This document shows positions 1-27,346 of a DNA stretch of 52,094 nucleotides, piece by piece. Every line of letters begins with the position of its first letter. Within the stretch, counting starts at the first letter, position 1. The translations under genes were made by a program, and so were the position numbers. The notes under the pieces were generated by a model that was not told where the DNA came from, did not search any database, and worked only from the letters and a program-made list of their open reading frames with translations. The stretch comes from Guillardia theta CCMP2712 (Eukaryota > Protista > Cryptophyta), in NCBI RefSeq assembly GCF_000315625.1, contig NW_005434556.1:174309-226402 (forward strand), given 5' to 3'.

Positions 1-1565
1 AGCACGGGAGCGTCTAGTTAGTGTATAGCGGGTCGACCGTGGGGGGGCATGTCCCTCTCATTGGCCTCGACGACCAACTCTGACACACTTGGGAGATCCT
101 TTGGGCATCCCCAGCTGTAAGGTCCTCGGAGGGAGGTGAGGGAGGGAGGGGAGGGAGAGGAAATGAGAGAACAGTAAGATAGAGAGGAAAAGATAGAAAT
201 GGAGGAGGAGAGGAGGAGGAGGAGGAGGAGAAAGAGGGAAGGAGGGAGAGGAAGAGGAGGAGGGAGAGGGGGAGAGTTAGAGGAATAGAAGGGGGAGCAC
301 GAGCAGAGGCAGGAGGAGGACGAGTTGATGGTGGTGATGGAGTAGCAGGAGGAGGACGAGAAGGAGGAGGAGAAGGAGAGAGAGGAGGGAGGAGAAAGAG
401 AGGGAGGAGGAGTAGGTGGTGGTGGTGGTGGTGGTGGAGGAGGAGGAGGAGTAACAGGAGGAAGTGGTGGTGCTGAAGTAGAANNNNNNNNNNNNNNNNN
501 NNNNNNNNNNNNNNNNNNNNNNNNNNNNNNNNNNNNNNNNNNNNNNNNNNNNNNNNNNNNNNNNNNNNNNNNNNNNNNNNNNNTCTTCTTCGAGATGCCT
601 TCCTCCCCCCAGATCGACGACCGGAAGGAGCTGAGGAGCTCCCTTCTCTCAAGATCGGTTAACCTGCCACTATCGAACCCGTCAGCGATGTGTCACGACA
701 AATTCCTTTACATGTCGCCCCTTTCATCCTACAGGCCATGCCGTCTCCCGTCTCTACCTTGTGCCCTCCTGGCCTATGTCGCTGGTTTTGTTGCGCTACC
801 GCTCCATACCGCATACGCTAGCTCTTCATCTTCCATCTCCTGATGACCGCCCATCACCTTCTTCTTTTCTATCCTCCCCATCCTCCTGTAGCAGCAGCAG
901 TACCAGTACCACCTCCAACACATCATTACCATCATCATCATCATCTCCATAACTACCACCATCTCCATCATCATCATCATCATCGTCATCATCATCATCA
1001 TCATCATCATCATCTCCTCCTCCTCCTCCTCCTCCCCTCTCCTCCTCCCCCCTCACGTCCTCTTCCCCCCCTCGTTCCTTCATTCTCCTCCCCCCCCCCC
1101 TCTCTCCTCCTCCCCTTCTAACGTAGCCATCGACAAGTTTGTCTCACTTTGATTCGAGGCTGAGCATTTGTAGAATCAACGNNNNNNNNNNNNNNNNNNN
1201 NNNNNNNNNNNNNNNNNNNNNNNNNNNNNNNNNNNNNNNNNNNNNNNNNNNNNNNNNNNNNNNNNNNNNNNNNNNNNNNNNNNNNNNNNNNNNNNNNNNN
1301 NNNNNNNNNNNNNNNNNNNNNNNNNNNNNNNNNNNNNNNNNNNNNNNNNNNNNNNNNNNNNNNNNNNNNNNNNNNNNNNNNNNNNNNNNNNNNNNNNNNN
1401 NNNNNNNNNNNNNNNNNNNNNNNNNNNNNNNNNNNNNNNNNNNNNNNNNNNNNNNNNNNNNNNNNNNNNNNNNNNNNNNNNNNNNNNNNNNNNNNNNNNN
1501 NNNNNNNNNNNNNNNNNNNNNNNNNNNNNNNNNNNNNNNNNNNNNNNNNNNNNNNNNNNNNNNAT

Positions 1566-1787
<222 letters not shown>

Positions 1788-2673
1788 AACTCTTCCCCCG
1801 CTTCTCATTCTCATGATGTTTGACCTGTTCGCCGCGAGCATTCCGAGGATACCACCTACCCCCTCTCAAACCCTCTTTTCAGAGCTGTAAGGGCGGTGGT
1901 GGGGGTCATGCGGACATTTGTTGGTTGATGGTCGCCAAATCGGGGGGGAGCAAACTCTGCAACAAACTTTGAAAGTTTAGACTTTGAGACTTTATGATCC
2001 AAACTTTGGTAGTGAAACTTTTTAGTGACAGTACGGTACTACGGAGTACTCCTTCGTTTCCTAGTATCTTATTGAGGCGGGTTTGTAGGGTGTATCCTCG
2101 TCCTCCTTTGTTTGCTCCGGTTTGCCTTTCTTTTGAAGTTAATGAAGAGTTTATAACTGTGACAGTTTTCCGGGGTTAACCGTGACCGTCCGATCCGGCC
2201 CCGGCCGCGGCGAAGTTCGGCGGCCCCGGCGGCCCGGCACCGGGGAGTCACACTGAGTTGGGCACAGTGACCAACATGCTGAATGTGGTCAGTTCGTCCA
2301 TGCTATGACGACTCGTTATCCGGCGAGTGTCCATCATGGCACTGGTGACCAGCGCTCAGTACCGATCGGACTCCGAGGGCCGTGACGGTGAGGCACTGGC
2401 ATGGTCAGCGGAGCTACGGTTCCGATTCGACCGTATTTCGATTCACGCAGGAGGTTGTGTTTGCTTTCAACCTGCTGTTGCAGCCAGTGAATGCGGAGCA
2501 GCTCACGGGGTTACGGAACTTGACAGGAACTGGCAGGGGACTGGCAGGTGCCGTCCCCCATTTATTGCTTCCAAACAGATATGGAAGTTCCACACGTTTC
2601 ATCAGCACTTGACCACAAGAGACAATGTTGACAGTAGGATCGTGTCCACGTTCAGAGACAGCAGGAACAGCGT

Positions 2674-3447
2674 CTAGGCATCCGGCTTGTTCCTGACGGT
2701 GACGTCCGACATCACGCATGACTGGCACCTGCTCCCGCGGTCAGCCTGCAAAAGCAGGAGATGGCAGGGACATACGCAAGGCGGAAGGATGGGGGGCATC
2801 CCTTGAGCAGCTTCTCCTCAGCAGCTGTGCGAGGAGAGAGATTTCCTGATACGAGATCGACCTGTTGAACATGGAATTTAAGCCTAATCTTCGAACCTCT
2901 TGCTGTTTCATCAACCTTGCACGTCCCACAGTTGCCACCTCCACCACAGTTGAAAAGTTTACCTGCCCAGAAAACAACATAAGGACATGAATATCATCTG
3001 TGTCAGTTGATGATAGACCTTTCATGGTATAGTACAAGTCCACCTTCCCTGCGAGCATGGCATCTCGGAGTATCGTTTCCCTATGAAATGAATGAGGAAC
3101 TTGCACAGAGAAGATTGAAAGCTCGGTGCAACTTGTCACGGCACAGAAACAAGAGAGAACACAACACCTTATGGTGGTGGGAAAAAGAGAGAAAACAAGA
3201 GGTCAACATGAATCTCTCACCTGTCACACTGCAGCTGCGCAACTTGCCCTCCGGATTTGTCAACGACCTTGACAGTAGCCATGTTCAACGATGTAGCACC
3301 GGAGCGAAGAGAGGGTGTAGAGACACAGGACGGGCTCCTGGATGAGCTTGGAGTGAAGCGAGCTGAAGGAGAGAAAGCGAAGGAGACGTCGGCTGTCGCC
3401 ATCGCCATCGCCATCGCCATCGCCGTTACCGCAATCTTGCGTGCCAT
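2674..3447 (-). CDS. Plastid-targeted 2Fe-2S ferredoxin-like protein (cyanobacterial/PnsB3-NDF4-like type), 5 exons
   Basis: Manually spliced exons 3447-3221, 3080-3019, 2962-2916, 2861-2776 and 2728-2674, all with GT-AG introns. Product: MARKIAVTAMAMAMAMATADVSFA|FSPS...ETILRDAMLAGKVDLYYTMKGKLFNCGGGGNCGTCKVDLVSGNLSPRTAAEEKLLKGCPPSFRLACQSCVMSDVTVRNKPDA*. It has the C-x4-C-x2-C...RLACQ cluster motif and a bipartite signal peptide + Phe-starting transit peptide typical of red-lineage secondary plastids. Confidence 0.93.
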
Positions 3448-3901
3448 GCTGCTAGATCTACCTTTGCAGCACTACCCCTACCTTATGTTACCCTACCCAG
3501 CACGATAGATCAAATACCAGCAGATACCACATTTCTGTTGAAATCACCTGACCAATCACATACAAAAATGACCCGTCTTTGCACGTTTTTTGATCACCCC
3601 CACCCCCAGTCTTAAATGAGTACCCCCCAAAATTATTCACCCTACCCCCAAGATCCTGTGATCTCCGCACAGCCCCTTATGTGTCACCTTATAACTTCAC
3701 GGGGGTGGAACTCCTCTTTTACCGGTATTAGGACGGGTACTTTTTCAATCCTTTTTACAGGGGTGGGGTAGTAGAATTTGTTGGGAATCGCAATGGCGAT
3801 CCCGCGACAAACTGTTTCGAGGATGAATATCTCAAGAATGAAAATCTGTACAATGCAAAACAAACATTTTATATTTAGAGATACATACAAATTGTCATTC
3901 T

Positions 3902-6226
3902 CTATACTTGTTCGCTTTGTACACGTCTTAACTTTTGACATTTTGTCCTTTCTATCTCTTCTTCCGTAGACTTACAACCAGACAAAGTTCGTAATCCCTG
4001 AAATCCAGGCATTTGTCCTGTGAATCCTCCTCGTGTATCCAAAGATTGAGTATGTATACGTTTCCGAGATCGAGGTTGGGACCTGCACTCATTCTCTTTG
4101 TCCCGTGTTCCTTCCTCTGCGTTGAAAAGCTTCTTCTCCCCGCGTGGTCTGCTAAGAATGATTCGCTTTTTTGAGTGGTCATACACAAAAGGCAGATTGG
4201 GATCGAATTTTTTTGAGAGCTCAGTGCATGCTTTGTTGAATTTCCTCAAGAAATCTTTCTTGTTCAAATGACCTATCAAAGACCAGAGGTTTTCAACGCT
4301 GTCTGTGCAGAGCGTCCGTGCATTGAAGTCATACTCCTTTTCACCCAACACACCTTTGTTGTTGCTCAAATAACTCTGTATCTGTAGATGTGTGTCCATG
4401 GCTACAATCAGTCCTTCGAAGGTTACAGATGACAACCCCCTCATGTGCTTCTTGCCTACCCTCATCCAATCCACATCTCTTAGAAGCCAGGTTCGAGCTC
4501 TAAGAATGAGATTTCTTCTTTCAGACTTGGTGAGGCCTCTCTCGTCGAAAGCTCTGTGAAGGCCGTTCATTGCTTCTGCCATTCTTGCTGTTTCAATGTG
4601 TCCCTCTGCATTCAGAAGCGATATGGCCTTGCTGCTGAACATTTTTAACATGATATCCACTGATTGAGGGTCCGTGCACCCATCGACTTCCAGCTGCGTT
4701 AGCCATGACGAATTCTTCTTGGAAATATCAGTGTACGCAGCATGCCATGTTTTAGCCTCTTGCTGTGCAGTCGGGTTTCTCCCCGAGCCAACCGTGTGCC
4801 TGACATTCTTCAGTAAATGATTGATACATGGCGCAAAGAAAAGTAGCTTCTTCGTTGTTGGAGAGATAACAGGGTTTGACAGGTACTCGTTGAATTGAAA
4901 CCTAATCTTGTTTGGATCAAATTCTTCCAATCCATCTGTGATCAATCGTTCGAGCTCCCAGGGCGTGAATTTGGCTGTTTCATTCTCTGCAACCCCTTGT
5001 TGTATAATGCTATCGTATCCATACCGTCGGCAGAAGATGTGGATTCTGCTGTACATCTCGTTCAAACAGGCCTTAGTTCTGGTGGAAGGAGAACACTGCA
5101 ATTTCTTTTCTCTCTGGACCTGCCATATCAATTGGTTCCTCCTCAAACTCAACGCGAATTTCTCTATTTGGGCAAACTCTGCAGTGTTCATGTGCATTAT
5201 TCCAGATCGAGTTCGAATTGTCACTTGGGACAAGTCAGGTCCATCATATTGGTTCATATTTAGCAAATTGCATTCTCTCTCTACTTCCTGTGCAGTAATG
5301 GCTGGTTCAAAGTCGAATACGCATGAAATGTATGATGCGATCTCTGAGCATATCTGTGATACATGAAGCTGCTGGGCCTCTTGTTTGATAGCCTTCACCT
5401 CTATTATGAATGTGCTTGGATTGTTCACGTAGTAATTCCTGTATATGCAAGAAAACTCGCTGTCAAAAGACCAGACATTGAAAATAATTCCACGCTCGTG
5501 AGCCTCCTTTGTGACGGCTTCCAATATTCGAAGACCTTCAGAGGCACTTAAACTTTTGGTTGAAAAACCAATGTACATGGGGACAGGGGGTGTGCTCGCA
5601 CATCCATCTTGTGCAACCACACTGATGGCATCTTCAGCCAGTTCAGCAACTGTATGCTTGTAAAATTTCTCATTGTACTTGTACAACTCGTTTTGAAGTT
5701 CTGATTCGTTGACAGGCAGATCGCCATTCGCCATTCCCTCCAGTTTTCCTATCAATCGAGGAATTTCTACATCCATCTGTTCACAGCCTTCAATTACTGT
5801 CTTCAAATAACGTTGATGTGGTGTGAACCTGACATCCTCTGGAGATTCGCCTACGGTTCTATGCTTGGCAACAAATGCACTTCGAACCTTCTTGTATGCT
5901 TGCTCCATATGACTCTTCCTCTGATGCACACTCTGTTGATCGGATCTCAACATGCCAACCAGCTGTTCGCTGATATAGTTTTCTGTCTTTCCTGTCAAAC
6001 AAAACTTTTCCTTGCGATCTTGAAGCAGGTCAATTCGCTGAGCCAAGTCAGGTTCATGACTTGTTATACCCCCCAGATCTGCTTCACATTCCTCAAACAC
6101 AGAACAAAATCCTGCATTTATCATTGTTTTGTCGATCGCACAACAATTCACTCCAGTCTGACAATGCTCAGGATAACATTTAAAGTTTCTAAGATAGCTC
6201 GTGGCCCGGCGCCGTCCGGGCCGCAA
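3902..6226 (-). mobile_element. P-element-superfamily-like DDE transposase core ORF (774 aa, intronless, N-terminus missing)
   Basis: Motifs occur in P/THAP9 order: CCAIDKT (first Asp), VWSFDSEF (second Asp), FFAPCINHLLKNVR (C/DxxH), DPQSVDIMLKMFS and LCTDSVENLWSLI (catalytic Glu, cf. QDxLENxFS). The region is more AT-rich than host genes and has no introns. The first in-frame ATG (~6124) lies after the first Asp, so the real 5' end is lost or spliced. No TIR or TSD was identified. Confidence 0.8.
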
Positions 6227-6253
6227 AACTTACCAGACCCCAAATAACTTAGT

Positions 6254-8085
6254 AAGTAGGGATCGGAGCAACAAGAAGCACAGACAATGAGGCAGAGAGA
6301 CAGAGAGACAGAGAGACAAGAGAAAAGAAAAGAGAGCCTGTCGCACACACCGCGCAAAGGCCAGCAGCAGCAAGAGGAGCCTCTGGTGAAGCAGAGAGTG
6401 ATGTTGCACGCGCATGTTTGGAGAAACAAGATAGATCAATCAGGACTTGCTTTTACTAGACTGTATCAAGCAGGGCAGGCTACTGCTGCTCGTCAGATCA
6501 TGGAGGTCTCTTTCTGTCGCGTGGACTCTAGGTGTGCGGTGTGAGCCAAGGTCCGGTGTACCACAACACGGATGGTTCACCATCGAAGCTCGTCCGATGA
6601 TCCTCTTGAAGCCTGGTCTGGTTGAACACGTACCACTGCAGAAACAGCGATACACTCCTTGCATGTAGATCGTCTGCGGCCGTGGAGGCAGACGCTGCCT
6701 CCCCCGCACTCCTTGCATCGAGATCGCTGACGGCCGTGGGGGCAGATGCTGGATCCCCCGCACTCCTTGCATTGAGATCGCTGACGGCCGTGGAGGCAGA
6801 CGCTGGATCCCCCGCACTCCCTGCATGTAGATCGCTGACGGCCGTGGGGGCAGACGCTGGCTCCCCCGCACTCCTTGCATCGAGATCGTCTGCGGGCGTG
6901 AGGGCAGAAGGTGGGTCCCCCGCACTCCTTGCATCCAGATCGTATACGGCCGTGGGGGCAGACGCTGGATCCCCCGCACTCCTTGCATTGAGATCGCCTC
7001 CGGCCGTGGGGGCAGATGCTGGATCCCCCGCACTCCCTGCATTGAGATCGTATACGGCCGTGGGGGCAGAAGCTGCCTCCCCCGCACTCCTTGCATCGAG
7101 ATCGTATGCGGCCGTGGGGGCAGATACTGGCCCCCCCGCACTCCTTGCATGTAGATCGCCTGCGGCCGTGGGGGCAGAAGCTGGCTCCCCCGCACTCCTT
7201 GCATGTACCTCGTATACGGCCGTGGGGGCAGACGCTTATCCTGCCTTCCTCTCCCTCCTCAGTGTCGGCAGGCAGCCATGCCTTGACGGCTCCTCCTCCT
7301 CCTGCGGAGGCCTCGACCCTCGGTCTCTTGCTGCGAGCGCGGCAGGGGCTGGAGGAGCTTCTCGCCATGTCTCCCGTCCAGGGCAGCGCGAACATGCCGT
7401 CGTCGGGTGGAGGACGGAAGGCGGGAGGGGTAGGGGTAGCAAGGCAGGGGGTAGGAGGGGAGGGAAGAAAAAGGCGGGAAGAAGCCTACCTGACTACCCC
7501 ACCCTCCCGTGCTCCTGCAGGGCCTCGCGACCCGTGACCCGTACACGGGGTGGGGTCCTACAGACCGCCGACTGACATTCAGCCGCAGAGATCACTCAGT
7601 CACTGTCGGTGGATGGTATGGAGGGGGTAGGGTACTAGATGGGTGATGAAGTTACGACCGTAGAGAAATGGCGGGAAGATGAAAGTTTGTGGGTCAGTCA
7701 GTCGGGCCCCGGCTCTTATCACCCCGGTCCGCTCATTCACTGAGACTGACTTTGACTAAGGGTCCTTTCACTCAAAGTTAGTCTCCTCATCCTGCCTACT
7801 GCTGATACCTTCACTTCACTGCGCGCAGCACCAGACCCCCGCGCCATCCCAGCGATGTCGCTGTGACCGCCGCCGAAGGACGATAGGGTACGATTGGCTG
7901 ACCCTCGAGGAGGAGCAGGCTACAGATCTAAGCGATCGCACGAGAGATGCTCGCTCGTGCGTGAGGAGCCTCACCACCCCTGGTGCTTTCCCTTGACCAT
8001 AACAGGATCGTCAACAACTGGTCGCTCGTGTTATCAAATATACTTCATATCTCTACTCTTCACCTTCGTGTGTTATCCAGCGGAG
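6254..8085 (-). repeat. Inverted partial copy (copy A) of the zinc-finger tandem unit
   Basis: The reverse complement matches the unit from ctccgctggataacacacgaagg (cf. ~20237) through the ZF gene to tccgatccctactt (cf. ~14144), with several internal deletions. Confidence 0.93.
6577..7395 (-). CDS. CxH-x6-CxxC repeat (putative zinc-finger array) protein, copy A, 11 repeats
   Basis: 272-aa ORF with 11 x S[IVF]C[PL]HGRxRxxCKECGG. It has the same leader as the other copies except for an in-frame 24-aa deletion that removes KKKRK. Confidence 0.8.
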   Translation of the reverse strand: MFALPWTGDMARSSSSPCRARSKRPRVEASAGGGGAVKAWLPADTEEGEEGRISVCPHGRIRGTCKECGGASFCPHGRRRSTCKECGGASICPHGRIRSRCKECGGGSFCPHGRIRSQCRECGGSSICPHGRRRSQCKECGGSSVCPHGRIRSGCKECGGPTFCPHARRRSRCKECGGASVCPHGRQRSTCRECGGSSVCLHGRQRSQCKECGGSSICPHGRQRSRCKECGGGSVCLHGRRRSTCKECIAVSAVVRVQPDQASRGSSDELRW

Positions 8086-8920: not shown

Positions 8921-9865
8921 TAGAAAAGAAACTTCTGGACTAACGGCAGGGAGGTGATGGAGTGGGTATAGGGGAGCAGTGTTCTGTGGGTGACCTGAGT
9001 ACCGCTGCAAAGAGAGGGATGACGAGGGGTGGTGGGGCACTGTTTTGTGTTTCGATTGTGAAAGGAATCCTGTCACCAGGAAGTGACCGGCCAAAGCGCC
9101 GTGAAAGGTGGGGCCATGGTTGTGGTAAGTATTGTAAGGCAACGACTGAAGGTTAGGTAGCTTCCTAGGTTTGCTCCTCACTGTCTTCCTTGATTGCTTC
9201 AGAGTGATGAAGGCACTGCTCTCTGACGGTGACTGAGTCAGTCACGGGAGCCGCTGATTGCAGCATTGGGCAAATTTGTAGCTACAGAGTCTGATGGCAT
9301 GACGAAAGCACAACAAGGTTGCAGGCGATGAGTTGAAGTTTTTGGAGCTGATATAGTACCGAGCCTCTGAGTGCACACATCATGGCATGCTCACTAGTAC
9401 TCTTGATCCGCAAGGTATGCACCACTGTTGCTCCGATGCCGTACAGAACTTATCAAATCCGAGATCCTCACAGTGATCAGGGAGCTAGAGATACTTGTGC
9501 GAAAACACGAGGAATAGAACTGGACTCCGGAACTGAACTTGAAAGGAGGAGCAGGAGAAAATAGGCTTACACACCAGTTAAGAACGTAAACTATCACGGT
9601 TTAATCCACACTTAAAGAGAAGATAAACGAAGCTCCGACAAGAGCCCCCAAGGCCTGAACGTCTCTCTGAGATCAACGAAAAGAAAAGAGAAATTCACGT
9701 GAGCCTCGGAGATGCTTTTGTGTACGCGCACACTGGCACAGACAAAGCACCTGATCTCGTCGTATATGAAACAGAAGGCCTCTCTCCCCGCACTTCCATC
9801 GTCCTGCCTCACAGAAAAAACAGGATCCTCCAGTCAGTCAACCAATGCGAGGCAAAAAGTCAGGA

Positions 9866-11308
9866 TCAAACCACAGCATCCGAAGCAAGAAGCACTGGAC
9901 AGCATTGATGGCCGTACTGGCACACCCACACCTCTTCCACTCCATCTACCTTGAGCCTGCCTAGTCCACCTGCCCAGAACTTCAGTGACATCGTATGTGC
10001 ACAAGAGAAAACCTTCCCCAACGAACCTGTAATGAAGAAGTGACGTACTGGCTGCAACGGCTCCGTCTCATGCTGGATAATGTGCTCCCAAGATGCGTTC
10101 AAGGAGCAGTTGCCGTTCCAAGGAAGAACTGGCGTTATTCCTGTGCTGTTGGACAAGCTGCTGGTGTCCCATCCTCCAACACACACCGTTTCGTTCTCAC
10201 AAGGAGCCAGCCCCACATCCAGCTTTGCAAAGGCGGGCCATGAAGTATGGATGCAAGTCAGATTGTTGTCATACATCTCTAGAACTGTTAGAGCCGTCAA
10301 GTTTGCGAAAGCCATAGAGGACACGCATACGAGTCGATTGTCCTGAAGATATAGCCAACCTATCGTCGAGAGCCCGTCGAATAATCCCTCTGGAAGGCTC
10401 GTCAGCTGGTTGCCGCCAAGATCTAGACCCAGCAGCTGAGTGGTCCTGTCGAAAATCCCCTTTGGAAATCCCGTCAGCTGGTTGCCGCCAAGATCTAGCC
10501 AGCTCAACCCCGAGAGCCCGTGAAAGACACCCTTGTCAAGTCTAGCAATCTTGTTGTAGCCAAGATGTAGGCCTCGCAGCTTCGAGAGTCCGGTGAAGAC
10601 TCCCTCCTCAAGGCTCGTTAGCTCATGGCCGGTAAGGTCTAGCTCCTCCAACGCCGAGAGGTCCCTGAACACTCCCGCAGGAAGCTCCTTGAGCCGGTTG
10701 TTTGAAAAATAGATCCAGTACAACGCCGTGAGCCCTTTGAATATTCCCTCTGGTATGCTCGTCAGCTCGTTGTTATCGAGAGACAGATACTTCAGTCCTG
10801 TAAGCCCCTGAAATATTCCCGCCGGAAGAGTTGTTAGCTTATCGCTGTTAAGATTTAACTCTCTCAAGCTCAAGAGCCCGTGAAATATTCCCTCTGGAAG
10901 GCTCTTTAGATTATTGCCAGAAAAACTGAGTACCTCCAGCCCCAAGAGTCCGTCGAAGATTGCTTCTGGCATGCTTGTCAGCTGATTGCTACCCAAAGAA
11001 AGATGACGCAAGTTGAAGAGCCCGTGAAATATCCCCTCTGGAAGGATTGTTATCTGGTTGTCCCAAAGGAAGAGTGACTCTAGATTCGAGAGCCCGTCGA
11101 ATACAGCCTCAGTGATATTTCGGATGCTTTGACGGCTCAAGTCTAGACTCGTACAATCGCTCGCGCAATTTCCTTCCCTCGTCAGCAGCCCTCCTTCCGA
11201 GATATCAAATGTGCATCCTCCGCAAGGTACACTTCTTGCTCCATGTGCTAGAGGGCTGACCGCGCACAGCGCCACCATGTACATCACGGTGTTTCGATAC
11301 AACGACAT
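9866..11308 (-). CDS. Secreted/surface leucine-rich-repeat protein (~13 typical 24-aa LRRs, Cys-containing N-cap)
   Basis: Hydrophobic N-terminal signal-like segment and Cys cap (PCGGCTF...GNCASDC), then repeats of LxLxxNxLxxLPEGIFxGLxxL. The 3' end may be spliced. Confidence 0.9.
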   Translation of the reverse strand: MSLYRNTVMYMVALCAVSPLAHGARSVPCGGCTFDISEGGLLTREGNCASDCTSLDLSRQSIRNITEAVFDGLSNLESLFLWDNQITILPEGIFHGLFNLRHLSLGSNQLTSMPEAIFDGLLGLEVLSFSGNNLKSLPEGIFHGLLSLRELNLNSDKLTTLPAGIFQGLTGLKYLSLDNNELTSIPEGIFKGLTALYWIYFSNNRLKELPAGVFRDLSALEELDLTGHELTSLEEGVFTGLSKLRGLHLGYNKIARLDKGVFHGLSGLSWLDLGGNQLTGFPKGIFDRTTQLLGLDLGGNQLTSLPEGLFDGLSTIGWLYLQDNRLVCVSSMAFANLTALTVLEMYDNNLTCIHTSWPAFAKLDVGLAPCENETVCVGGWDTSSLSNSTGITPVLPWNGNCSLNASWEHIIQHETEPLQPVRHFFITGSLGKVFSCAHTMSLKFWAGGLGRLKVDGVEEVWVCQYGHQCCPVLLASDAVV

Positions 11309-11951
11309 CCTCTTCTTGCTCCTGCTGTCTGTCTGCGCTACACAGCTAACTGGACAAGTCGCTGCTCGGCAGCTGCTTGGTACAGCAGGACCCTGCCAAC
11401 AAGTGTTGGGAGGCAGCTAGGAGGAGGGGAGTGAGCTCGGGGTTATCGTGGGCGTGATGGGGGTGGGTCCCTTAACCGGGGGAAGGGTTAAATCGGGGAA
11501 AGAAGGGGGTGAAAGGACCCTTAGTCAAAGTCAGTCTCAGTGAATGAGCGGACCGGAGGGTGATAAGAGCCGGGGCCCGACTGACTGACCCACAAACTTT
11601 CATCTTCCCGCCATTTCTCTACGGTCGTAACTTCATCACACCACACCACACACCCACCCACCCTCTTCCTAGCGCTTTACCATCTAGTACCCTACCCCCT
11701 CCATACCATCCGACGACTGACTGAGTGATCTCTGCGGCTGAAAGTCAGTCGGCAGTCTGTAGGACCCCACCCTGTGTGATCCCCCTACTCCACCCCCTCT
11801 CTCACCATACGGGTGTCCCCGAGGCCCTGCAGGAGCACGGGAGGGTGGGGTAGTCAGGTAGGCTTCTTCCCGCCTTTTTCTTCCCTCCCCTCCTACCCCC
11901 TGCCTTGCTACCCCTACCCCTCCCGCCTTCCGTCCTCCACCCGACGACGGC

Positions 11952-13619
11952 ATGTTCGCGCTGCCCTGGACGGGAGACATGGCGAGAAGCTCCTCCAGCC
12001 CCTGCCGCGCTCGCAGCAAGAGACCGAGGGTCGAGGCCTCCGAGGAAGGAGGAGGAGCCCTCAAGGCATGGCCGCCTGCCGACACTGAGGAGGGAGAGGA
12101 AGGCAGGATACGGAAGGAAGCCGAGAGGGGGTCATGCAAGAAGAAGCGCAAAGAAGAGAAGAGCCAGGAGAGAGCAGAGGGCAGCGTCTGCACCCACGGC
12201 CGCAGGAGATCTCGATGCAAGGAGTGCGGGGGAGGCAGCATCTGCCCCCACGGCCGTCAGCGATCTAAATGCAAGGAGTGCGGGGGAGCCAGCATCTGCC
12301 TCCACGGGCGGAGGCGATCTACATGCAAGGAGTGCGGGGGAGCCAGCATCTGCCCCCACGGCCGTATACGATCTCGATGCAAGGAGTGCGGGGGAGCCAG
12401 CATCTGCCCCCACGGCCGTCAGCGATGTCGATGCAAGGAGTGCGGGGGATCCAGCATCTGCCCCCACGGCCGTGTACGAGGTACATGCAAGGAGTGCGGG
12501 GGATCCAGCATCTGCCCCCACGGCCGTATACGATATGGATGCAAGGAGTGCGGGGGATCCAGCATCTGCCCCCACGGCCGCATACGATCTCGATGCAGGG
12601 AGTGCGGGGGAGGCAGCATCTGCCCCCACGGCCGTCAGCGATCTGAATGCAAGGAGTGCGGGGGATCCAGCATCTGCCCCCACGGTCGTACACGATCTCG
12701 ATGCAAGGAGTGCGGGGGAGCCAGCATCTGCCCCCACGCCCGTGTACGATCTCGATGCAAGGAGTGCGGGGGAGGCAGCATCTGCCCCCACGGCCGGAGG
12801 CGATCTGAATGCAGGGAGTGCGGGGGAGCCAGCATCTGCCCCCACGGCCGGAGGCGATCTACATGCAAGGAGTGCGGGGGATCCAGCATCTGCCCCCACG
12901 GCCGGAGGCGATCTGAATGCAAGGAGTGCGGGGGAGCCAGCGTCTGCCCCCACGGCCGTATACGAGGTACATGCAAGGAGTGCGGGGGAGGCAGCATCTG
13001 CCCCCACGGCCGGAGGCGATCTGAATGCAAGGAGTGCGGGGGAGCCAGCATCTGCCCCCACGGCCGGAGGCAATCTGAATGCAAGGAGTGCGGGGGAGGC
13101 AGCATCTGCCCCCACGGCCGGAGGCGATCTGAATGCAAGGAGTGCGGGGGAGCCAGCATCTGCCCCCACGCCCGTGTACGATCTCGATGCAAGGAGTGCG
13201 GGGGAGCCAGCATCTGCCTTCACGGCCGGAGGCGATCTGAATGCAAGGAGTGCGGGGGAGGCAGCGTCTGCCCCCATGGTCGTACACGATCCCGATGCAA
13301 GGAGTGCGGGGGAGCCAGCATCTGCCCCCACGGCCGTATACTATCTCGATGCAAGGAGTGCGGGGGAGGCAGCATCTGCCCCCACGCCCGTAGACGCTCT
13401 ACATGCAAGGAGTGCGGGGGAGGCAGCATCTGCCTCCATGGGCGGAGGCGATCTACATGCAAGGAGTGCGGGGGATCTAGCATCTGCCCCCACGGCCGCA
13501 TACGATATGGATGCAAGGAGTGCGGGGGAGGCAGCGTCTGCCCCCACGGCCGGAGGCGATCTACATGCAAGGAGTGTATCGCTGTGTCTGCGCTAGTATC
13601 TGGCGCGTGTGCGCAATGA
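11952..13619 (+). CDS. CxH-x6-CxxC repeat (putative zinc-finger array) protein, copy B, 26 repeats
   Basis: 555 aa = 77-aa leader with basic NLS-like motifs (KRPR, KKKRK) + 26 x 18-aa repeats (54 bp) + short tail. Confidence 0.85.
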   Translation: MFALPWTGDMARSSSSPCRARSKRPRVEASEEGGGALKAWPPADTEEGEEGRIRKEAERGSCKKKRKEEKSQERAEGSVCTHGRRRSRCKECGGGSICPHGRQRSKCKECGGASICLHGRRRSTCKECGGASICPHGRIRSRCKECGGASICPHGRQRCRCKECGGSSICPHGRVRGTCKECGGSSICPHGRIRYGCKECGGSSICPHGRIRSRCRECGGGSICPHGRQRSECKECGGSSICPHGRTRSRCKECGGASICPHARVRSRCKECGGGSICPHGRRRSECRECGGASICPHGRRRSTCKECGGSSICPHGRRRSECKECGGASVCPHGRIRGTCKECGGGSICPHGRRRSECKECGGASICPHGRRQSECKECGGGSICPHGRRRSECKECGGASICPHARVRSRCKECGGASICLHGRRRSECKECGGGSVCPHGRTRSRCKECGGASICPHGRILSRCKECGGGSICPHARRRSTCKECGGGSICLHGRRRSTCKECGGSSICPHGRIRYGCKECGGGSVCPHGRRRSTCKECIAVSALVSGACAQ

Positions 13620-14289
13620 TCTGTCATGTACGTACAGGCTCTCACAACCCGGGCTCTTTAGACGGATCACTTGGCTGCAACTGGTCAGGTCTGCTATCCT
13701 CACGCTCGTGGCAGGAGGTCGCACCACGAGGGCAGGTCAACATTCTTACCATCACCCAGACCAAGTATCAAGAGGATCATCGGAGGAGCTTCGATGGTGA
13801 ACCATCCATGTTGTGGTACACCGGACCTTGGCTCACACCGCACTCCTAGAGTCCACGTGACAGAAGGAGACCTCCATGATCTGACGAGCAGCAGTAGCCT
13901 GCCCTGCTTGATACGGTCTAGTAAAAGCAAGTCCTGATTGATCTATCTTGTTTCTCCAAGGATGCGCGTGCAACATCACTCTCCGCTTCACCAGAGGCTC
14001 CTCTTGCTGCTGCTGCCCTTTGCGCGGTGTGTGCGACAGGCTCTCTTTTCTTTTCTCTTGTCTCTCTGCCTCTCTGTCTCTCTGCCTCATTGTCTGTGCT
14101 TCTTGTTGTCTTTGTGGTAGGTGTAAGTCGTACGCACGTCAGATCCGATCCCTACTTCCACCCTGATCACGTACGGTATGATTTCACTGTCTTCAAAGGT
14201 CAAGAGAGGGTGGGGTAGTCGGGTAGAGGAGATCCACAAACTTCCTTCTTCCCGCCTTTTTGCACAAGTCCAACCCCAGCGACTCCAAA

Positions 14290-15048
14290 ATGGGGGGAGC
14301 GAGTTCATCGCTGAGGCTGGTAGGCGCGCTGCCATCGGACGTGCATGGGATGATGTACGAGCACCTGATCTCTCCGCGCAACCTTGTGTGGACCATGGAC
14401 GATGCTGCGGTGACCGCGGGGATGCTGATCTCGGTGTGCATGGATGTGCGGGAGGGCTTTGCCCGTGGGCTATGGGCGAGGCTGAGGAGTGTGTTGCCTT
14501 GTCCTCGGGGGCAGCAGCACGGAGTTGTGGATATGAGGGGGTTTATCCGTGAGGTCGGGATCAAGCGGGTCCGTGGAGGGTCCTCTCTTGATGAGAGGGT
14601 TGTGTCGTATTTCGAGGAGAGGCCCGATATGCTGATGAACCCGATCCATCCACTGCAGCGGAGGGTGACGACGTGCGGGGAGAAGATGTTCTACTGGAGG
14701 GCGAGGAGGACGTTCAAGCTGGAGGATGGGGCCCTCAAGGGTCTTGTGTGGAGGACAACGGAGCGGAGGCACTGGGGAAACTGCAGCAGCTACCGGGAGA
14801 TCCGGCGTGTTGCGAGGGAGGTGCATGGTTTTGGCGGATTGCGGGAGACCAAAACAAATTCGGCATCGATTTTGAGATCTCAGAGCTTTAGAGCCGTTAC
14901 AAGACAATGTCGTTGCCTTTTCTGCAGCAGCCGCCGCTCTTGGCGGGGGGCATCATGTTGTACCGGGAAGTCCGTCCAGAGGGTCCTGCCAGGGTCGTTG
15001 CTGTCGTCCTCGTCTCAGCGTCTTGGTCGGCGTACCGGAGGGCGATGA
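14290..15048 (+). CDS. Companion ORF2 (unit B): N-terminal F-box-like motif and XPA C-terminal-like segment
   Basis: ATG at 14290. LVGALPSDVHGMMYEHL resembles an F-box start. ARRTFKLEDGALKGL...RHWGN...YREIRRVAREVHGFGGL resembles the XPA DNA-binding C-terminal subdomain. Open in units B and D; domain calls are by eye. Confidence 0.55.
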   Translation: MGGASSSLRLVGALPSDVHGMMYEHLISPRNLVWTMDDAAVTAGMLISVCMDVREGFARGLWARLRSVLPCPRGQQHGVVDMRGFIREVGIKRVRGGSSLDERVVSYFEERPDMLMNPIHPLQRRVTTCGEKMFYWRARRTFKLEDGALKGLVWRTTERRHWGNCSSYREIRRVAREVHGFGGLRETKTNSASILRSQSFRAVTRQCRCLFCSSRRSWRGASCCTGKSVQRVLPGSLLSSSSQRLGRRTGGR

Positions 15049-16178
15049 CGATGCAGACGCAGAGTGCGGACCTGTGTGCTGTGCGTGTAGGGGGGGCGGG
15101 GGGGGAGTAGGGCTTACCCAGAGATGAGTAGGATGGCTGCGACGGGGGGACATACCCGGCGCTGGCGATGTCGACGTGGTTGTGCGAGGAAGTCAGTATG
15201 CTTGTGTGACCCGCCTTGGTGTGTGCGTGTGTTGATCGTCACCATGCTGGTGACGGGGAAGGCCTTGGCGATGAAGGGGACGCCGGTTCGCCTGTACGCC
15301 ATGCGTTCCCCCCCGAAGCTTCACGGGTTGCAACGTCTACAGCAAATACTCATCAAGGCACCTCCGCTGAATAACACACGAAGGTGAAGAGTAGAGATAT
15401 CAAGTATATTTGATAACACGAGCGCAGTATCGACCCGTGGCACATACAGCAAGGGGGAGGACAGACCACCTGAGCAGTTGTTGACGATCCTGTTAGGTCA
15501 AGGGGAAGCACCAGGGGTGGTGAGGCTCCTCACGCACGAGCGAGCATCTCTCGTGCGATCGCTTAGATCTGTAGCCTGCTCCTCCTCGAGGGTCAGCCAA
15601 TCGTACCCTATCGTCCTTCGGCGGCGGTCACAGCGACATCGCTGGGATGGCGCGGGGGTCTGGTGCTGCGCGCAGTGAAGTGAAGGTATCAGCAGTAGGC
15701 AGGATGAGGAGACTAACTTTGAGTGAAAGGACCCTTAGTCAAAGTCAGTCTCAGTGAATGAGCGGACCGGAGGGTGATAAGAGCCGGGGCCCGACTGACT
15801 GACCCACAAACTTTCATCTTCCCGCCATTTCTCTACGGTCGTAACTTCATCACACCACCCCACCCACCCACCCTCTTCCTAGAGCTTTATTACCATCTAG
15901 TACCCTACCCCCTCCATACCATCCACTGACTAGACTGAGTGAACTCTGCGGCTGAATGTCAGTCGGCGGTCTGTAGGACCCCACCCCGTGTGACCCCTGT
16001 GATCCCCTGACTCCACCCCCTCTTTCACCATACGGGTGTCTGAGTGGGAGGCCCTGCAGGAGCACGGGAGGGTGGGGTAGTCAGGTAGGCTTCTTCCCGC
16101 CTTTTTCTTCCCTCCCCTCCTACCCCCTGCCTTGCTACCCCTACCCCTCCCGCCTTCCGTCCTCCACCCGACGACGGC

Positions 16179-18386
16179 ATGTTCGCGCTGCCCTGGACGG
16201 GAGACATGGCGAGAAGCTCCTCCAGCCCCTGCCGCGCTCGCAGCAAGAGACCGAGGGTCGAGGCTTCCGAGGGAGGAGGAGGAGCCCTCAAGGCATGGCC
16301 GCCTGCCGACACTGAGGAGGGAGAGGAAGGCAGGATACGGGAGGGAGCAGAGAGAGGGTCATGCAAGAAGAAGCGCAAAGAAGAGCAGAGCCAGAATAGG
16401 GGGAGAGGCAGCATCTGCCCCCACGGCCGACAGAAAGCTGGATGCAAGAAGTGCGGGGGAGGCAGCATCTGCCCCCACGGCCGTATACGATCTCGATGCA
16501 AGGAGTGCGGGGGAGGCAGCATCTGCCCCCACGGCCGTCAGCGATCTCGATGCAAGGAGTGCGGGGGAGGCAGTATCTGCCCCCACGCCCGTATACGATA
16601 TGGATGTAAGGAGTGCGGGGGAGCCAGCATCTGCGTCCACGGCCGGAGGCGATCTCGATGCAGGGAGTGCGGGGGAGCCAGCATCTGCCCCCACGGCCGG
16701 AGGCGATCTGAATGCAAGGAGTGCGGGGGAGGCAGCGTCTGCCCCCACGGCCGGAGGCAATCTCGATGCAAGGAGTGCGGGGGAGGCAGCGTCTGCCCCC
16801 ACGGCCGGAGGCGCTCCGAATGCAACGAGTGCGGGGGAGGCAGCATCTGCCCCCACGGCCGTCAGCGATCTACATGCAGGGAGTGCGGGGGAGCCAGCAT
16901 CTGCCCCCACGGCCGTCAGCGATCTACATGCAAGGAGTGCGGGGGAGGCAGCATCTGCCCCCACGGCCGTCAGCGATCTCGATGCAAGGAGTGCGGGGGA
17001 GGCAGTATCTGCCCCCACGCCCGTATACGATATGGATGTAAGGAGTGCGGGGGAGCCAGCATCTGCGTCCACGGCCGGAGGCGATCTCGATGCAGGGAGT
17101 GCGGGGGAGCCAGCATCTGCCCCCACGGCCGGAGGCGATCTGAATGCAAGGAGTGCGGGGGAGGCAGCGTCTGCCCCCACGGCCGGAGGCAATCTCGATG
17201 CAAGGAGTGCGGGGGAGGCAGCGTCTGCCCCCACGGCCGGAGGCGCTCCGAATGCAACGAGTGCGGGGGAGGCAGCATCTGCCCCCACGGCCGTCAGCGA
17301 TCTACATGCAGGGAGTGCGGGGGAGCCAGCATCTGCCCCCACGGCCGTCAGCGATCTACATGCAGGGAGTGCGGGGGAGCCAGCATCTGCCCCCACGGCC
17401 GTCAGCGATCTACATGCAAGGAGTGCGGGGGAGGCAGCATCTGCCCCCACGGCCGTCAGCGATCTCGATGCAAGGAGTGCGGGGGAGGCAGTATCTGCCC
17501 CCACGCCCGTATACGATATGGATGTAAGGAGTGCGGGGGAGCCAGCATCTGCGTCCACGGCCGGAGGCGATCTCGATGCAGGGAGTGCGGGGGAGCCAGC
17601 ATCTGCCCCCACGGCCGGAGGCGATCTGAATGCAAGGAGTGCGGGGGAGGCAGCGTCTGCCCCCACGGCCGGAGGCAATCTCGATGCAAGGAGTGCGGGG
17701 GAGGCAGCGTCTGCCCCCACGGCCGGAGGCGCTCCGAATGCAACGAGTGCGGGGGAGGCAGCGTCTGCCCCCACGGCCGTCAGCGATCTACATGCAGGGA
17801 GTGCGGGGGAGGCAGCATCTGCCCCCACGGCCGTCAGCGATCTACATGCAAGGAGTGCGGGGGAGCCAGCATCTGCCCCCACGCCCGTGTACGATCTCGA
17901 TGCAAGGAGTGCGGGGGAGCCAGCATCTGCCCCCACGGCCGTCAGCGATTTGAATGTAAGGAGTGCGGGGGAGGCAGTATCTGCCCCCACGGCCATATAC
18001 GAGGTACATGCAAGGTGTGCGGGGGAGGCAGCATCTGCCCCCACGCCCGTATACTATCTCGATGCAAGGAGTGCGGGGGAGTCAGCATCTGCCCCCACGG
18101 CCGCATACGATCTCGATGCAAGGAGTGCGGGGGAGCCAGCATCTGCCCCCACGCCCGTAGACGATCTACATGCAAGGAGTGCGGGGGATCCAGCGTCTGC
18201 CCCCACGGCCGGAGGCGATCTACATGCAAGGAGTGCGGGGGATCCAGCATCTGCCCCCACGGCCGTATACGATATGGATGCAAGGAGTGCGGGGGAGGCA
18301 GCGTCTGCGTCCACGGCCGGAGGCGATCTCAATGCAAGGAGTGTATCGCTGTGTCTGCGCTAGTATCTGGCGCGTGTGCGCAATGA
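16179..18386 (+). CDS. CxH-x6-CxxC repeat (putative zinc-finger array) protein, copy C, 36 repeats
   Basis: 735-aa ORF with 36 repeats, including a thrice-repeated 8-9-finger block. Confidence 0.85.
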   Translation: MFALPWTGDMARSSSSPCRARSKRPRVEASEGGGGALKAWPPADTEEGEEGRIREGAERGSCKKKRKEEQSQNRGRGSICPHGRQKAGCKKCGGGSICPHGRIRSRCKECGGGSICPHGRQRSRCKECGGGSICPHARIRYGCKECGGASICVHGRRRSRCRECGGASICPHGRRRSECKECGGGSVCPHGRRQSRCKECGGGSVCPHGRRRSECNECGGGSICPHGRQRSTCRECGGASICPHGRQRSTCKECGGGSICPHGRQRSRCKECGGGSICPHARIRYGCKECGGASICVHGRRRSRCRECGGASICPHGRRRSECKECGGGSVCPHGRRQSRCKECGGGSVCPHGRRRSECNECGGGSICPHGRQRSTCRECGGASICPHGRQRSTCRECGGASICPHGRQRSTCKECGGGSICPHGRQRSRCKECGGGSICPHARIRYGCKECGGASICVHGRRRSRCRECGGASICPHGRRRSECKECGGGSVCPHGRRQSRCKECGGGSVCPHGRRRSECNECGGGSVCPHGRQRSTCRECGGGSICPHGRQRSTCKECGGASICPHARVRSRCKECGGASICPHGRQRFECKECGGGSICPHGHIRGTCKVCGGGSICPHARILSRCKECGGVSICPHGRIRSRCKECGGASICPHARRRSTCKECGGSSVCPHGRRRSTCKECGGSSICPHGRIRYGCKECGGGSVCVHGRRRSQCKECIAVSALVSGACAQ

Positions 18387-19050
18387 TCTGCCATGTACGT
18401 ACAGGCTCTCACAGCCCGGGCTCTTTAGACGGATCACTAGGCTGCAACTGGTCAGGTCTGCTATCCTCACGCTCGTGGCAGGAGGTCGCACCACGAGGGC
18501 AGGTCAACATTCTTACCATCACCCAGACCAAGTATCAAGAGGATCATCGGAGGAGCTTCGATGGTGAACCATCCATGTTGTGGTACACCGCCTTCACACC
18601 GCACTCCTAGAGTCCACGTGACAGAAGGAGACCTCCATGATCTGACGAGCAGCAGTAGCCTGCCCTGCTTGATACGGTCTAGTAAAAGCAAGTCCTGATT
18701 GATCTATCTTGTTTCTCCAAGGATGCGCGTGCAACATCACTCTCCGCTTCACCAGAGGCTCCTCTTGCTGCTGCTGCCCTTTGCGCGGTGTGTGCGACAG
18801 GCTCTCTTTTCTTTTCTCTTGTCTCTCTGTCTCTCTGTCTCTCTGCCTCATTGTCTGTGCTTCTTGTTGTCTTGGTGGTAGGTGTAAGTCGTACGCACGT
18901 CAGATCCGATCCCTACTTCCACCCTGATCACGTACGGTATGATTTCACTGTCTTCAAAGGTCAAGAGAGGGTGGGGTAGTCGGGTAGAGGAGATCCACAA
19001 ACTTCCTTCTTCCCGCCTTTTTGCACAAGTCCAACCCCAGCGACTCTGAA

Positions 19051-19837
19051 ATGGGGGGAGCGAGTTCATCGCTGAGGCTGGTAGGCGCGCTGCCATCGGA
19101 CGTGCATGGGATGATGTACGAGCACCTGATCTCTCCGCGCAACCTTGTGTGGACCATGGACGAGGCTGCGGTGACCGCGGGGATGCTGATCTCGGTGTGC
19201 ATGGATGTGCGGGAGGGCTTTGCCCGTGGGCTATGGGCGAGGCTGAGGAGTGTGTTGCCTTGTCCTCGGGGGCAGCAGCACGGAGTTGTGGATATGAGGG
19301 GGTTTATCCGTGAGGTCGGGATCAAGCGGGTCCGTGGAGGGTCCTCTCTTGATGAGAGGGTTGTGTCGTATTTCGAGGAGAGGCCCGATATGCTGATGAA
19401 CCCGATCCATCCACTGCAGCGGAGGGTGACGACGTGCGGGGAGAAGATGTTCTACTGGAGGGCGAGGAGGACGTTCAAGCTGGAGGATGGGGCCCTCAAG
19501 GGTCTTGTGTGGAGGACAACGGAGCGGAGGCACTGGGGAAACTGCAGCAGCTACCGGGAGATCCCGGCGTGTTGCGAGGAGTGCATGGTTTTGGCGATTG
19601 CGGGAGACCAAACAAATTCGACATCGATTTTNNNNNNNNNNNNNNNNNNNNNNNNNNNNNNNNNNNNNNNNNNNNNNNNNNNNNNNNNNNNNNNNNNNNN
19701 NNNNNNNNNNNNNNNNNNNNNNNNNNNNNNNTGGCGGGGGCATCATGTGTACCGGGAAGTCCGTCCAGAGGGTCCTGCCAGGGTCGTTGCTGTCGTCCTC
19801 GTCTCAGCGTCTTGGTCGGCGTACCGGAGGGCGATGA
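19051..19837 (+). CDS. Companion ORF2 (unit C), interrupted by an assembly gap
   Basis: Near-identical to 14290-15048. The indels flanking the N-gap at 19632-19731 look like low-quality contig ends. Confidence 0.45.
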
Positions 19838-20050
19838 CGATGCAGACGCAGAGTGCGGACCTGTGTGCTGTGCGTGTAGGGGGGGCGACAGGGGGCGGGG
19901 GGGGAGTAGGGCTTACCCAGAGATGAGTAGGATGGCTGCGACGGGGGGACATACCCGGCGCTGGCGATGTCGACGTGGTTGTGCGAGGAAGTCAGTATGC
20001 TTGTGTGACCCGCCTTGGTGTGTGCGTGTGTTGATCGTCACCATGCTGGT

Positions 20051-20161
20051 GACGGGGAAGACCTTGGCGATGAAGGGACGCCGAAGACCTTGGCGATGAA
20101 GGGGACGGGGAAAACCTTGGCGATGAAGGGGACGGGGAAGACCTTGGCGATGAAGGGGACG
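20051..20161 (+). repeat. Four tandem copies of a ~27-bp motif (gacggggaagaccttggcgatgaaggg), unit C only
   Basis: Units B and D have a single copy at the equivalent site (~15250, ~23997). Confidence 0.85.
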
Positions 20162-27271: not shown

Positions 27272-27346
27272 ATGATGATGACGACGACGACGACGACGAC
27301 GATGGTGGTGGTGGTGGTGGTGGTGGTGGTGGTGGTGGTGGTGGTG
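27272..27346. repeat. Compound (GAT)/(GAC)/(GGT) microsatellite replacing 81 bp of unit sequence
   Basis: The flanks cttgttgtc and ttcaaagg match the other units (cf. 18871 and 18953), but the intervening sequence is entirely different. Confidence 0.9.

What the first reader, a model, noticed from the sequence alone, without database searches (positions are those of the whole stretch)
3902..7395. Headless P-like transposase sits directly downstream of a co-oriented variable zinc-finger array
Seen: the 774-codon DDE ORF has no stops across its catalytic motifs but has no ATG before the first catalytic Asp and no THAP or other N-terminal DNA-binding region. Homology to the ZF unit begins about 30 bp upstream (6254), and the 11-finger ORF ends about 350 bp upstream on the same strand. 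Established: P-superfamily transposases normally carry an N-terminal zinc-binding (THAP) DNA-binding domain. Inference: either the array is spliced to or co-expressed with the transposase and replaces its targeting module (a protein-programmed transposase or nuclease), or the unit simply inserted into and decapitated a transposon. I could not build a convincing in-frame splice path by eye; the obvious GTAAG donor near 6232 joined to the first AG gives a TGA.
Basis: partly seen in the sequence, partly recalled or inferred. Interest (0 to 1): 0.8.

Follow-up and report, generated by a model that had tools for sequence, protein, structure and literature searches.

The report
Truncated P-type transposon beside zinc-finger gene
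The "headless transposase" is a broken, front-truncated copy of a young P-element-like jumping gene of the alga Guillardia theta. Its intact, transcribed copy elsewhere in the genome has its own front end and no zinc-finger array, so the neighbourhood with the array looks accidental and ordinary.

Summary
A 774-codon open frame (3902-6226, minus strand) has no ATG before Asp32. It lies 350 bp downstream of a co-oriented 11-finger ORF (6577-7395), and homology to the zinc-finger unit ends at 6254.

The "array-guided transposase" reading is not supported. The window is Guillardia theta CCMP2712. Window 6174..3698 is an ungapped, 98.6 % identical copy of positions 1496-3972 of a 3,972-bp element on another scaffold (GUITHDRAFT_115010). 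That element has 23-nt terminal inverted repeats, a 9-bp target-site duplication and an intact 942-codon ORF with its own ATG and N-terminus.

The window copy keeps only the right inverted repeat (3698-3720). A third copy is internally deleted. Four other loci (five copies in all, two sub-families) have no CPHGR fingers within 10 kb, and none of 127 distant homologues carries them.

RNA-type contigs covering 3698-6174 carry the letters of the intact copy (33 of 34 variant sites) and leave the window sequence at 6174. No splice joint was seen between 3300 and 6660. The two ORFs are in different frames.

The protein is P-superfamily by fold (VIA Z 24.3 to 6P5A) and by profile (E 2.4e-6).

Verdict: an ordinary truncated transposon copy. 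The by-product is a young, expressed P-like family in a cryptophyte.

The parts
3698..6174 (-). 5'-truncated copy (element positions 1496-3972 of 3972) of a P-superfamily DNA transposon
   Evidence: Ungapped blastn match, 98.59 % over 2,477 bp, to L003 10557-13033 (GUITHDRAFT_115010 locus), with 35 substitutions.
3698..3720 (-). Right terminal inverted repeat of the element (outermost bases CACGGGGGTGGAACT on the + strand)
   Evidence: The same 23-nt arm ends the L003 element at 13011-13033 and pairs with its left arm at 9062-9084. An exact 15-mer match lies at window 3698. Homology with L003 stops exactly here.
3902..6226 (-). 774-codon open frame. Codons 1-18 come from filler; codons 19-774 are transposase (RNase H core with helical insertion and GBD-like insertion domain, C-terminal tail)
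   Evidence: ORF list. Alignment to paralogs. AF2 model pLDDT 73, and VIA Z 19.4 to 6p5a_A over residues 195-677.
3902..5776 (-). Annotated gene model (P0001, 624 aa, starts at Met151 of the open frame)
   Evidence: the search for homologous proteins and the look-up of encoding contigs.
6175..6253 (-). 79-bp junction filler of unknown origin between the ZF-unit homology and the transposon homology
   Evidence: No match to the element's 5' end, to the ZF units or to any fetched locus.
6254..8085 (-). Inverted, partial copy of the zinc-finger gene unit: upstream region, array and about 320 bp of 3' region. It lacks the companion gene that follows in the four tandem units.
   Evidence: blastn against units at 11509-27269: 82-88 % identity upstream and 95.8 % in the 3' region. 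Alignment A3.
6577..7395 (-). Zinc-finger array ORF, 272 aa, 11 fingers of 18 residues. It is in a different reading frame from the transposase ORF.
   Evidence: The frame offset is (7395-6226) mod 3 = 2.

Best explanation
The ORF is the surviving 3' 62 % of one copy of a young P-superfamily cut-and-paste transposon of Guillardia theta.

Shown:
- A full-length element exists on scaffold JH993044.1. It is 3,972 bp long, with 23-nt TIRs beginning CACGGGGGTGGAAC, a 9-bp TSD, an upstream 237-codon Cys-containing ORF and an intact 942-codon ORF.
- The window copy is 98.6 % identical to it from an internal point (6174) to the right TIR (3698).
- The window copy lacks the left 1,495 bp, which encode the element's own N-terminal regions.
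- The RNA-type contigs covering this stretch carry the letters of the intact copy.

Inferred:
- The copy landed, or was left, at the edge of a cluster of zinc-finger array genes.
- A single deletion with 79 bp of filler most simply explains two things at once: why the transposon lost its 5' end, and why this one ZF unit lost the companion gene that follows all four other units. An insertion that was truncated from the start is the alternative.
- The truncated copy cannot make an active transposase. It lacks the left TIR, the HTH-like region and any ATG upstream of the beta1 Asp candidate.
- Its adjacency to the array has no function.
For: - Identity of the window: its gene model maps to GCA_000315625.1 JH993082.1.
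- 2,477-bp ungapped match at 98.59 % to L003.
- L003 element: TIR pair 9062-9084 / 13011-13033, 9-bp TSD GGTCTGCTG on both sides, and an intact 942-aa ORF with ATG plus an upstream ORF in the same frame.
- A third copy, L005, is internally deleted but has its left TIR.
- RNA-type contigs from three studies cover only 3698-6174. They carry L003's letter at 33 of 34 variant sites, and they continue beyond 6174 with sequence found exactly at L003 10527. Raw RNA reads show only L003-type letters.
- No joints (splices) in 3300-6660. The bases before 6174 are not AG.
- The element's 5' part is absent from the whole window.
- P-superfamily kinship: profile against PDB hits only 6p5a at E 2.4e-6; VIA Z 24.3, rmsd 3.6 A, 294 residues aligned, next best 11.4; relatives carry PF21787.
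Against: - The frame is still open over 774 codons, and dN/dS against the intact copy is 0.34. This could hint at constraint. With 1.4 % divergence an open frame is expected anyway, and differences between copies largely reflect selection on active lineages.
- One low-depth contig in run X13 (6145-6287, no differences, depth about 5) reproduces the window's own junction. If X13 is RNA, there is weak read-through from the ZF gene into the fragment.
- Contigs drop rare variants, and only about 6 % of the raw-read run was read, so silence of the window copy is not proven.
- The order of events (deletion or truncated insertion) is inferred.
Confidence: 0.9

Rival explanations
1. Array-guided transposase or nuclease: the 11-finger array is spliced to, or translated with, the transposase core and replaces its missing DNA-binding head.
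For: Same strand and a 350-bp gap. The core lacks its own N-terminus. Earlier unchecked notes of this scan say similar arrays sit in front of DNA-cutting enzymes in giant viruses.
Against: - The ORFs are in different frames, with stops in between.
- No joint in the laid RNA-type runs.
- The transposase part is a 98.6 % copy of an autonomous element with its own N-terminus.
- No other copy and no homologue has fingers.
- The left TIR is missing, so there is no substrate pair in cis.
Confidence: 0.02
2. Domesticated fragment: the truncated protein (for example the 624-aa model starting at Met151) is expressed from this locus and kept by selection, perhaps as a regulator of the active family or as a partner of the ZF protein, through co-transcription as two separate proteins.
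For: Intact frame and dN/dS 0.34. A junction contig at 6145-6287 in X13. Truncated P proteins act as repressors in Drosophila (general knowledge; PMC7776569 describes internally deleted copies).
Against: - Only 1.4 % divergence, too young to read selection from an open frame.
- All variant sites seen in the RNA-type contigs and the raw RNA reads carry the other copy's letters.
- Drosophila repressors keep the N-terminal DNA-binding part, which is exactly what is lost here.
Confidence: 0.05
3. The zinc-finger unit (or a partial duplicate of it) inserted into an intact resident transposon and split it.
For: Unit homology ends abruptly at 6254, only 79 bp from the transposon breakpoint.
Against: - The 5' 1,495 bp of the element are not on the far side of the unit or anywhere else in the 52-kb window.
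- The ZF unit is older (82-96 % identity to its sister units) than the transposon copy (98.6 %).
Confidence: 0.03

Closest known systems
Drosophila P element and its transposase (PDB 6P5A/6PE2); the P superfamily including THAP9 and Pdre2
   Same: - RNase H-like core interrupted by a large alpha-helical insertion domain, then a C-terminal domain: VIA Z 24.3, and the only significant PDB profile hit.
- The [C/D](2)H signature after beta5 (C-I-N-H) and the 'D.vE..F' glutamate motif.
- TIR-bounded cut-and-paste element with a target-site duplication.
- Internally deleted and truncated derivatives beside a full-length copy (PMC7776569).
   Different: - No THAP domain is detectable. PMC7776569 states that THAP is restricted to animals.
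- The N-terminus instead holds an unclassified Cys-containing ORF and a low-confidence region that resembles the P HTH only by eye.
- An insertion of about 135 helical residues precedes the aligned RNase H strands.
- The TSD is 9 bp in the one intact copy, against 8 bp. The TIRs are 23 nt and imperfect, against 31 nt.
- No Pfam P/THAP9 model reaches threshold on this protein itself.
Internally deleted or truncated non-autonomous P copies (for example KP-type elements in Drosophila)
   Same: A defective copy derived from a full-length element by loss of internal or terminal sequence, at near-identity to the master copy.
   Different: Drosophila deletion derivatives keep both termini and the N-terminal DNA-binding part. 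The window copy has lost the left terminus and the N-terminal part, so it can be neither mobilised nor a THAP-type repressor.
Zinc-finger or TALE-type arrays fused to nucleases
   Same: Only the linear order: a modular finger array upstream of a DNA-cleaving enzyme core on one strand.
   Different: There is no fusion: separate frames, stops, no splice, and the enzyme part is a recent transposon fragment.

Membership tests
P superfamily of DNA transposons | RNase H-like catalytic fold with an insertion domain between beta5 and alpha4, as in P transposase | tested here: met
   Full-length paralog model against 6p5a_A: Z 24.3, rmsd 3.6 A, 294 residues aligned; the next families score 10-11. Window ORF model: Z 19.4. 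Foldseek's top two hits are 6p5a and 6pe2, prob 1.00.
P superfamily of DNA transposons | Sequence homology to P/THAP9 transposases | tested here: met
   Family profile against PDB: only 6p5a_A is significant, E 2.4e-6. Distant homologues carry PF21787. ESM-atlas neighbours are PF21787/21788/21789 clusters. Direct Pfam scans of this protein are negative.
P superfamily of DNA transposons | DDE triad plus the [C/D](2)H signature | tested here: inconclusive
   The second Asp (WSFD, 20/21), Glu (DSVEN, 27/29) and C(2)H (CINH) are present and conserved. The first Asp is ambiguous: D32 of 'AIDKTM' sits in a low-confidence region, and the widely conserved D207 aligns near DmTNP D252/hTHAP9 D304, not D230.
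P superfamily of DNA transposons | N-terminal THAP zinc-binding DNA-binding domain | tested here: not met
   No THAP hit in the window ORF, in the full-length ORFs of L003 or in P0002/P0003/P0006. No C2CH spacing in the first 200 residues of any of the 135 proteins fetched, which include the homologues.
P superfamily of DNA transposons | Terminal inverted repeats and an 8-bp target-site duplication | tested here: inconclusive
   TIRs are present (23 nt, 87 %). The TSD is 9 bp (GGTCTGCTG) in the single complete copy, against 8 bp for P (PMC7776569). One insertion cannot fix the family's TSD length.
P superfamily of DNA transposons | GTP binding by the insertion domain | not testable with these tools
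   The fold of the insertion domain matches, but GTP-contact residues were not mapped. This needs biochemistry.
Array-guided (programmable) transposase or nuclease | Array and enzyme in one polypeptide or one obligatory transcript | tested here: not met
   Different frames with stops between them. No joints in 3300-6660 in four runs.
Array-guided (programmable) transposase or nuclease | Linkage of array and enzyme conserved across copies and homologues | tested here: not met
   No fingers within 10 kb of four other copies, and none in the 127 homologues.

The most novel reading that the evidence does not exclude
Weak read-through from the zinc-finger gene into the fragment may be real, as the single low-depth junction contig suggests. 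The headless core, made from an internal ATG, would then be retained as a partner or regulator recruited by the array protein in trans. That would be an early step of transposase domestication next to a hypervariable DNA-reader gene.
Probability: 0.03. Interest if true: 0.7.

Novelty: new member of a known kind. Interest (0 to 1): 0.15.

Why it matters
For the question asked, it removes a tempting false lead. This locus is not a natural zinc-finger-programmed transposase.

What remains useful is modest. Guillardia theta, a cryptophyte, carries a young and apparently still transcribed P-superfamily transposon family. It has clear TIRs and a TSD, no THAP domain, a large helical insertion in the catalytic core, and both deleted and truncated derivatives. 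All of its genes are currently annotated as hypothetical proteins.

That helps TE annotation of this reference genome. It also gives a THAP-less P-type element outside animals whose end-recognition domain could be studied.

Tried and rejected
- Direct Pfam scans of the ORF, of pieces of it and of its paralogs gave no significant family.
- A single-sequence PDB search gave nothing.
- tblastn for the missing N-terminus anywhere in the window found nothing.
- Splicing was considered as an explanation for the transcripts leaving the window at 6174. It was rejected because the preceding bases are not AG and the continuation lies contiguously in L003.
- The 79-bp filler was tested as a remnant of the element's left end or as a templated copy of nearby DNA. 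No similarity above shuffled controls was found.
- A 7-of-9 match (AAGTTAT) between the right flank and 6250-6244 was considered as a TSD remnant. It is left open, because no TIR follows it.
- The bacterial promoter/terminator scan is irrelevant for a eukaryote and was ignored.
A donor inside the array would therefore only have appeared as a loose end at an acceptor. None was seen between 6174 and 6660.
Full report
**1. What is in the sequence**

The ORF list confirms a 774-codon open frame on the minus strand at 3902-6226. It begins at a TTG, and its first ATG is at codon 35. A 272-aa ORF lies at 6577-7395 on the same strand. Six-frame motif mapping finds 11 CxHGR...CxEC fingers at 6690-7230 on the minus strand. 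It also finds four much longer arrays on the plus strand between 12189 and 26700.

Self-comparison shows that 8085..6254 is an inverted, partial copy of the unit repeated four times downstream. Identity is 82-88 % in the upstream part and 95.8 % in the roughly 350 bp after the array. In the multiple alignment, homology ends at '...CCGATCCCTACTT' = 6254. In the four tandem units this point is followed within about 150 bp by the start of the companion gene, which the inverted unit lacks.

**2. Where the window comes from, and the other copies**

The word-index protein search returned the window's own gene model (P0001, 624 aa) and two Guillardia theta proteins at 55 % and 48 % identity. P0001 maps to GCA_000315625.1, scaffold JH993082.1, so the window is G. 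theta CCMP2712. Both relatives extend 110-220 residues further N-terminal, and tblastn finds no trace of that N-terminus anywhere in the 52-kb window.

The 90 % cluster of P0001 holds two more G. theta proteins, and the cluster of the paralog holds a 1,421-aa one. I fetched all of these loci.

**3. The intact element**

Window 6174..3698 matches L003 10557-13033 (scaffold JH993044.1, GUITHDRAFT_115010) without gaps at 98.59 % identity, with 35 substitutions in 2,477 bp. In L003 the homologous region is embedded in a structure with these features:
- an imperfect 23-nt inverted-repeat pair at 9062-9084 and 13011-13033;
- the same 9 bp, GGTCTGCTG, flanking both sides;
- an uninterrupted 942-codon ORF with its own ATG (10001-12829);
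- a 237-codon upstream ORF in the same frame (9167-9880), separated from it by two stops that begin at an AG|GTAACC donor-like site.

The upstream ORF is homologous to the N-terminal extension of the 1,421-aa paralog (E 8e-11).

The right arm ends exactly where homology with the window ends. The window has the same 15-mer at 3698. The window therefore holds element positions 1496-3972, including the right TIR, and lacks the left TIR and everything that encodes the N-terminal roughly 420 residues.

A third copy (L005, scaffold JH992991.1) has the left TIR and positions 1-2127 joined to 3526-3929, which is an internal deletion. A second sub-family (L002, L004; 55 % aa and 70 % nt identity) ends in a near-identical TIR core.

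None of L002-L005 has a CPHGR-type finger within 10 kb.

**4. RNA evidence**

I laid one raw-read RNA-Seq run and the contigs of three transcriptome-sized runs on 3300-6660.
- Contigs from three studies cover 3698-6174 only and share one set of differences from the window. 33 of the 34 listed variant letters are the letters of L003.
- Beyond 6174 the contigs continue, for up to 190 nt, with a sequence absent from the window and present exactly at L003 10527, immediately upstream of the match. In frame it reads ...FMMDEFRRMN|PEHCQTG..., continuing the homology to the paralog.
- The window bases before 6174 are ...AAATGTT, not AG, so this is a copy boundary and not a splice acceptor.
- The raw reads show only L003-type letters at the three variant sites they cover.
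- No joints were reported anywhere in 3300-6660.
- Run X13 contains a low-depth contig at 6145-6287 with no differences. It carries the window-specific letter at 6146 and crosses both 6174 and 6254. This shows the junction is real DNA in the organism. If X13 is RNA, as its patchy coverage suggests, it also means some read-through from the ZF gene reaches the fragment.
- Beyond the right TIR, the contigs continue with a third sequence found neither in the window nor in L003 or L005. The likely cause is a further copy, or a graph path through shared transposon sequence. This is unexplained and does not bear on the verdict.

**5. Family assignment**

A profile of the two paralogs, searched against 1.84 billion representatives, found 127 proteins. 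Most matched the C-terminal half, and several carry PF21787 (TNP-like RNase H N).

A 31-sequence profile searched against PDB sequences hit only the Drosophila P element transposase (6p5a_A, E 2.4e-6). The alignment covers the 'D/C..HLlKnvR' and 'kQ.v..A...FS' motifs and the catalytic 'D.vE.fF' motif.

The AF2 model of the 942-aa ORF has pLDDT 62, with a confident core at 230-480 and 610-840. Its matches are:

| Chain | Search | Score |
|---|---|---|
| 6p5a_A / 6pe2_A (P element transposase) | Foldseek | prob 1.00 |
| 6p5a_A / 6pe2_A | VIA | Z 24.3 (6p5a_A: rmsd 3.6 A, 294 residues) |
| Transib | VIA | Z 11.4 |
| RAG1 | VIA | Z 10.2 |
| Hermes | VIA | Z 10.1 |

The P-superfamily signature [C/D](2)H after beta5 (PMC8230255) is present as C-I-N-H.

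Three features differ from the Drosophila P element:
- No THAP domain is found. PMC7776569 states that THAP is restricted to animals.
- The TSD is 9 bp, not 8.
- The TIRs are shorter.

**6. Can the fragment make an enzyme?**

The model of the window ORF itself has pLDDT 73, with residues 1-59 disordered. It aligns to 6p5a_A only from residue 195, matching chain residue 249 (Z 19.4, 275 residues). P's beta1, which carries D230, therefore has no counterpart in the ordered part. Its equivalent must precede the helical insertion at residues 61-193.

The only conserved candidate is D32 in 'CCAIDKTMI', three codons before the first ATG. The acidic residues conserved across the wider family are D207 (18/21), D255 (20/21) and E645 (27/29).

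Whichever Asp is the first catalytic one, the fragment lacks the left TIR, the N-terminal regions and a proper start. dN/dS against the intact copy is 0.34 (14.5 synonymous and 18.5 non-synonymous differences). At 1.4 % divergence this mostly reflects selection on the active lineage and says little about this copy.

**7. How the juxtaposition arose (inferred)**

The element's 5' part is nowhere in the window, so the ZF unit did not simply split a resident element. The ZF unit is older than the transposon copy: 4-18 % divergence from its sisters against 1.4 %.

The inverted unit is truncated at 6254, just before the point where a companion gene follows in all four sister units. The transposon is truncated at 6174. 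The 79 bp between them match nothing. One deletion with filler that removed the companion gene, the intervening DNA and the element's left 1.5 kb explains both truncations. An insertion truncated from the outset is the alternative.

**8. Verdict**

This is a dead, 5'-truncated copy of a young P-type transposon lying next to a zinc-finger array gene. The two ORFs are in different frames and no transcript joining them was seen.

The array-transposase linkage is absent from every other copy and from every homologue examined.

Earlier notes of this scan had flagged P-like transposases elsewhere in this genome, and finger arrays that precede nucleases in viruses. I used these as context only.

Noticed in passing
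L003:9062-13033 (G. theta scaffold JH993044.1): A complete 3,972-bp P-superfamily element with 23-nt TIRs and a 9-bp TSD. Two co-framed ORFs (237 and 942 codons) are separated by a probable short intron. The upstream ORF has a CPIC...C...C..C cysteine motif that may be the element's own DNA-binding head. The locus is annotated only as a hypothetical protein, with a gene model (685 aa) that skips part of the ORF.
   Followed up: partly
L005:8285-10830 (scaffold JH992991.1): An internally deleted derivative of the same element (positions 1-2127 joined to 3526-3929). The left TIR is present and the last 43 bp are missing.
   Followed up: partly
window 3698 and lower; loose end: RNA-type contigs run through the right TIR into at least 590 nt of a sequence found in none of the window, L003 or L005. 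This suggests a fourth, transcribed copy, or a chimeric assembly path.
   Followed up: partly
L004 (scaffold JH992982.1), P0006: The second sub-family has a 1,421-aa gene model with about 600 extra N-terminal residues of unknown fold. A neighbouring gene has a weak Herpes_UL92 hit. The locus is broken into several ORFs.
   Followed up: no
P0021, P0036, P0045 (distant homologues): Long relatives combine a YqaJ-like viral recombinase/exonuclease domain with the TNP-like RNase H domain. This is an unusual architecture for a P-type transposase.
   Followed up: no
window 6244-6250 and 3691-3697: The 7-mer AAGTTAT lies just inside the filler next to the ZF-unit end, and again directly outside the right TIR. 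It may be a remnant of the original target-site duplication, or a chance match.
   Followed up: partly
window 27270-27340 (unit 4) against units 1-3: In the fourth tandem unit, the stretch after the ZF gene's 3' region is replaced by GAT/GAC/GGT trinucleotide repeats, and the companion-gene start diverges (alignment A3).
   Followed up: no
window 1001-2000 and 37001-39000: Strong compositional anomalies. At 1001-2000, GC is 0.28 with GC skew -0.51. At 37-39 kb the GC skew swings from -0.50 to +0.49. These are probably simple repeats.
   Followed up: no
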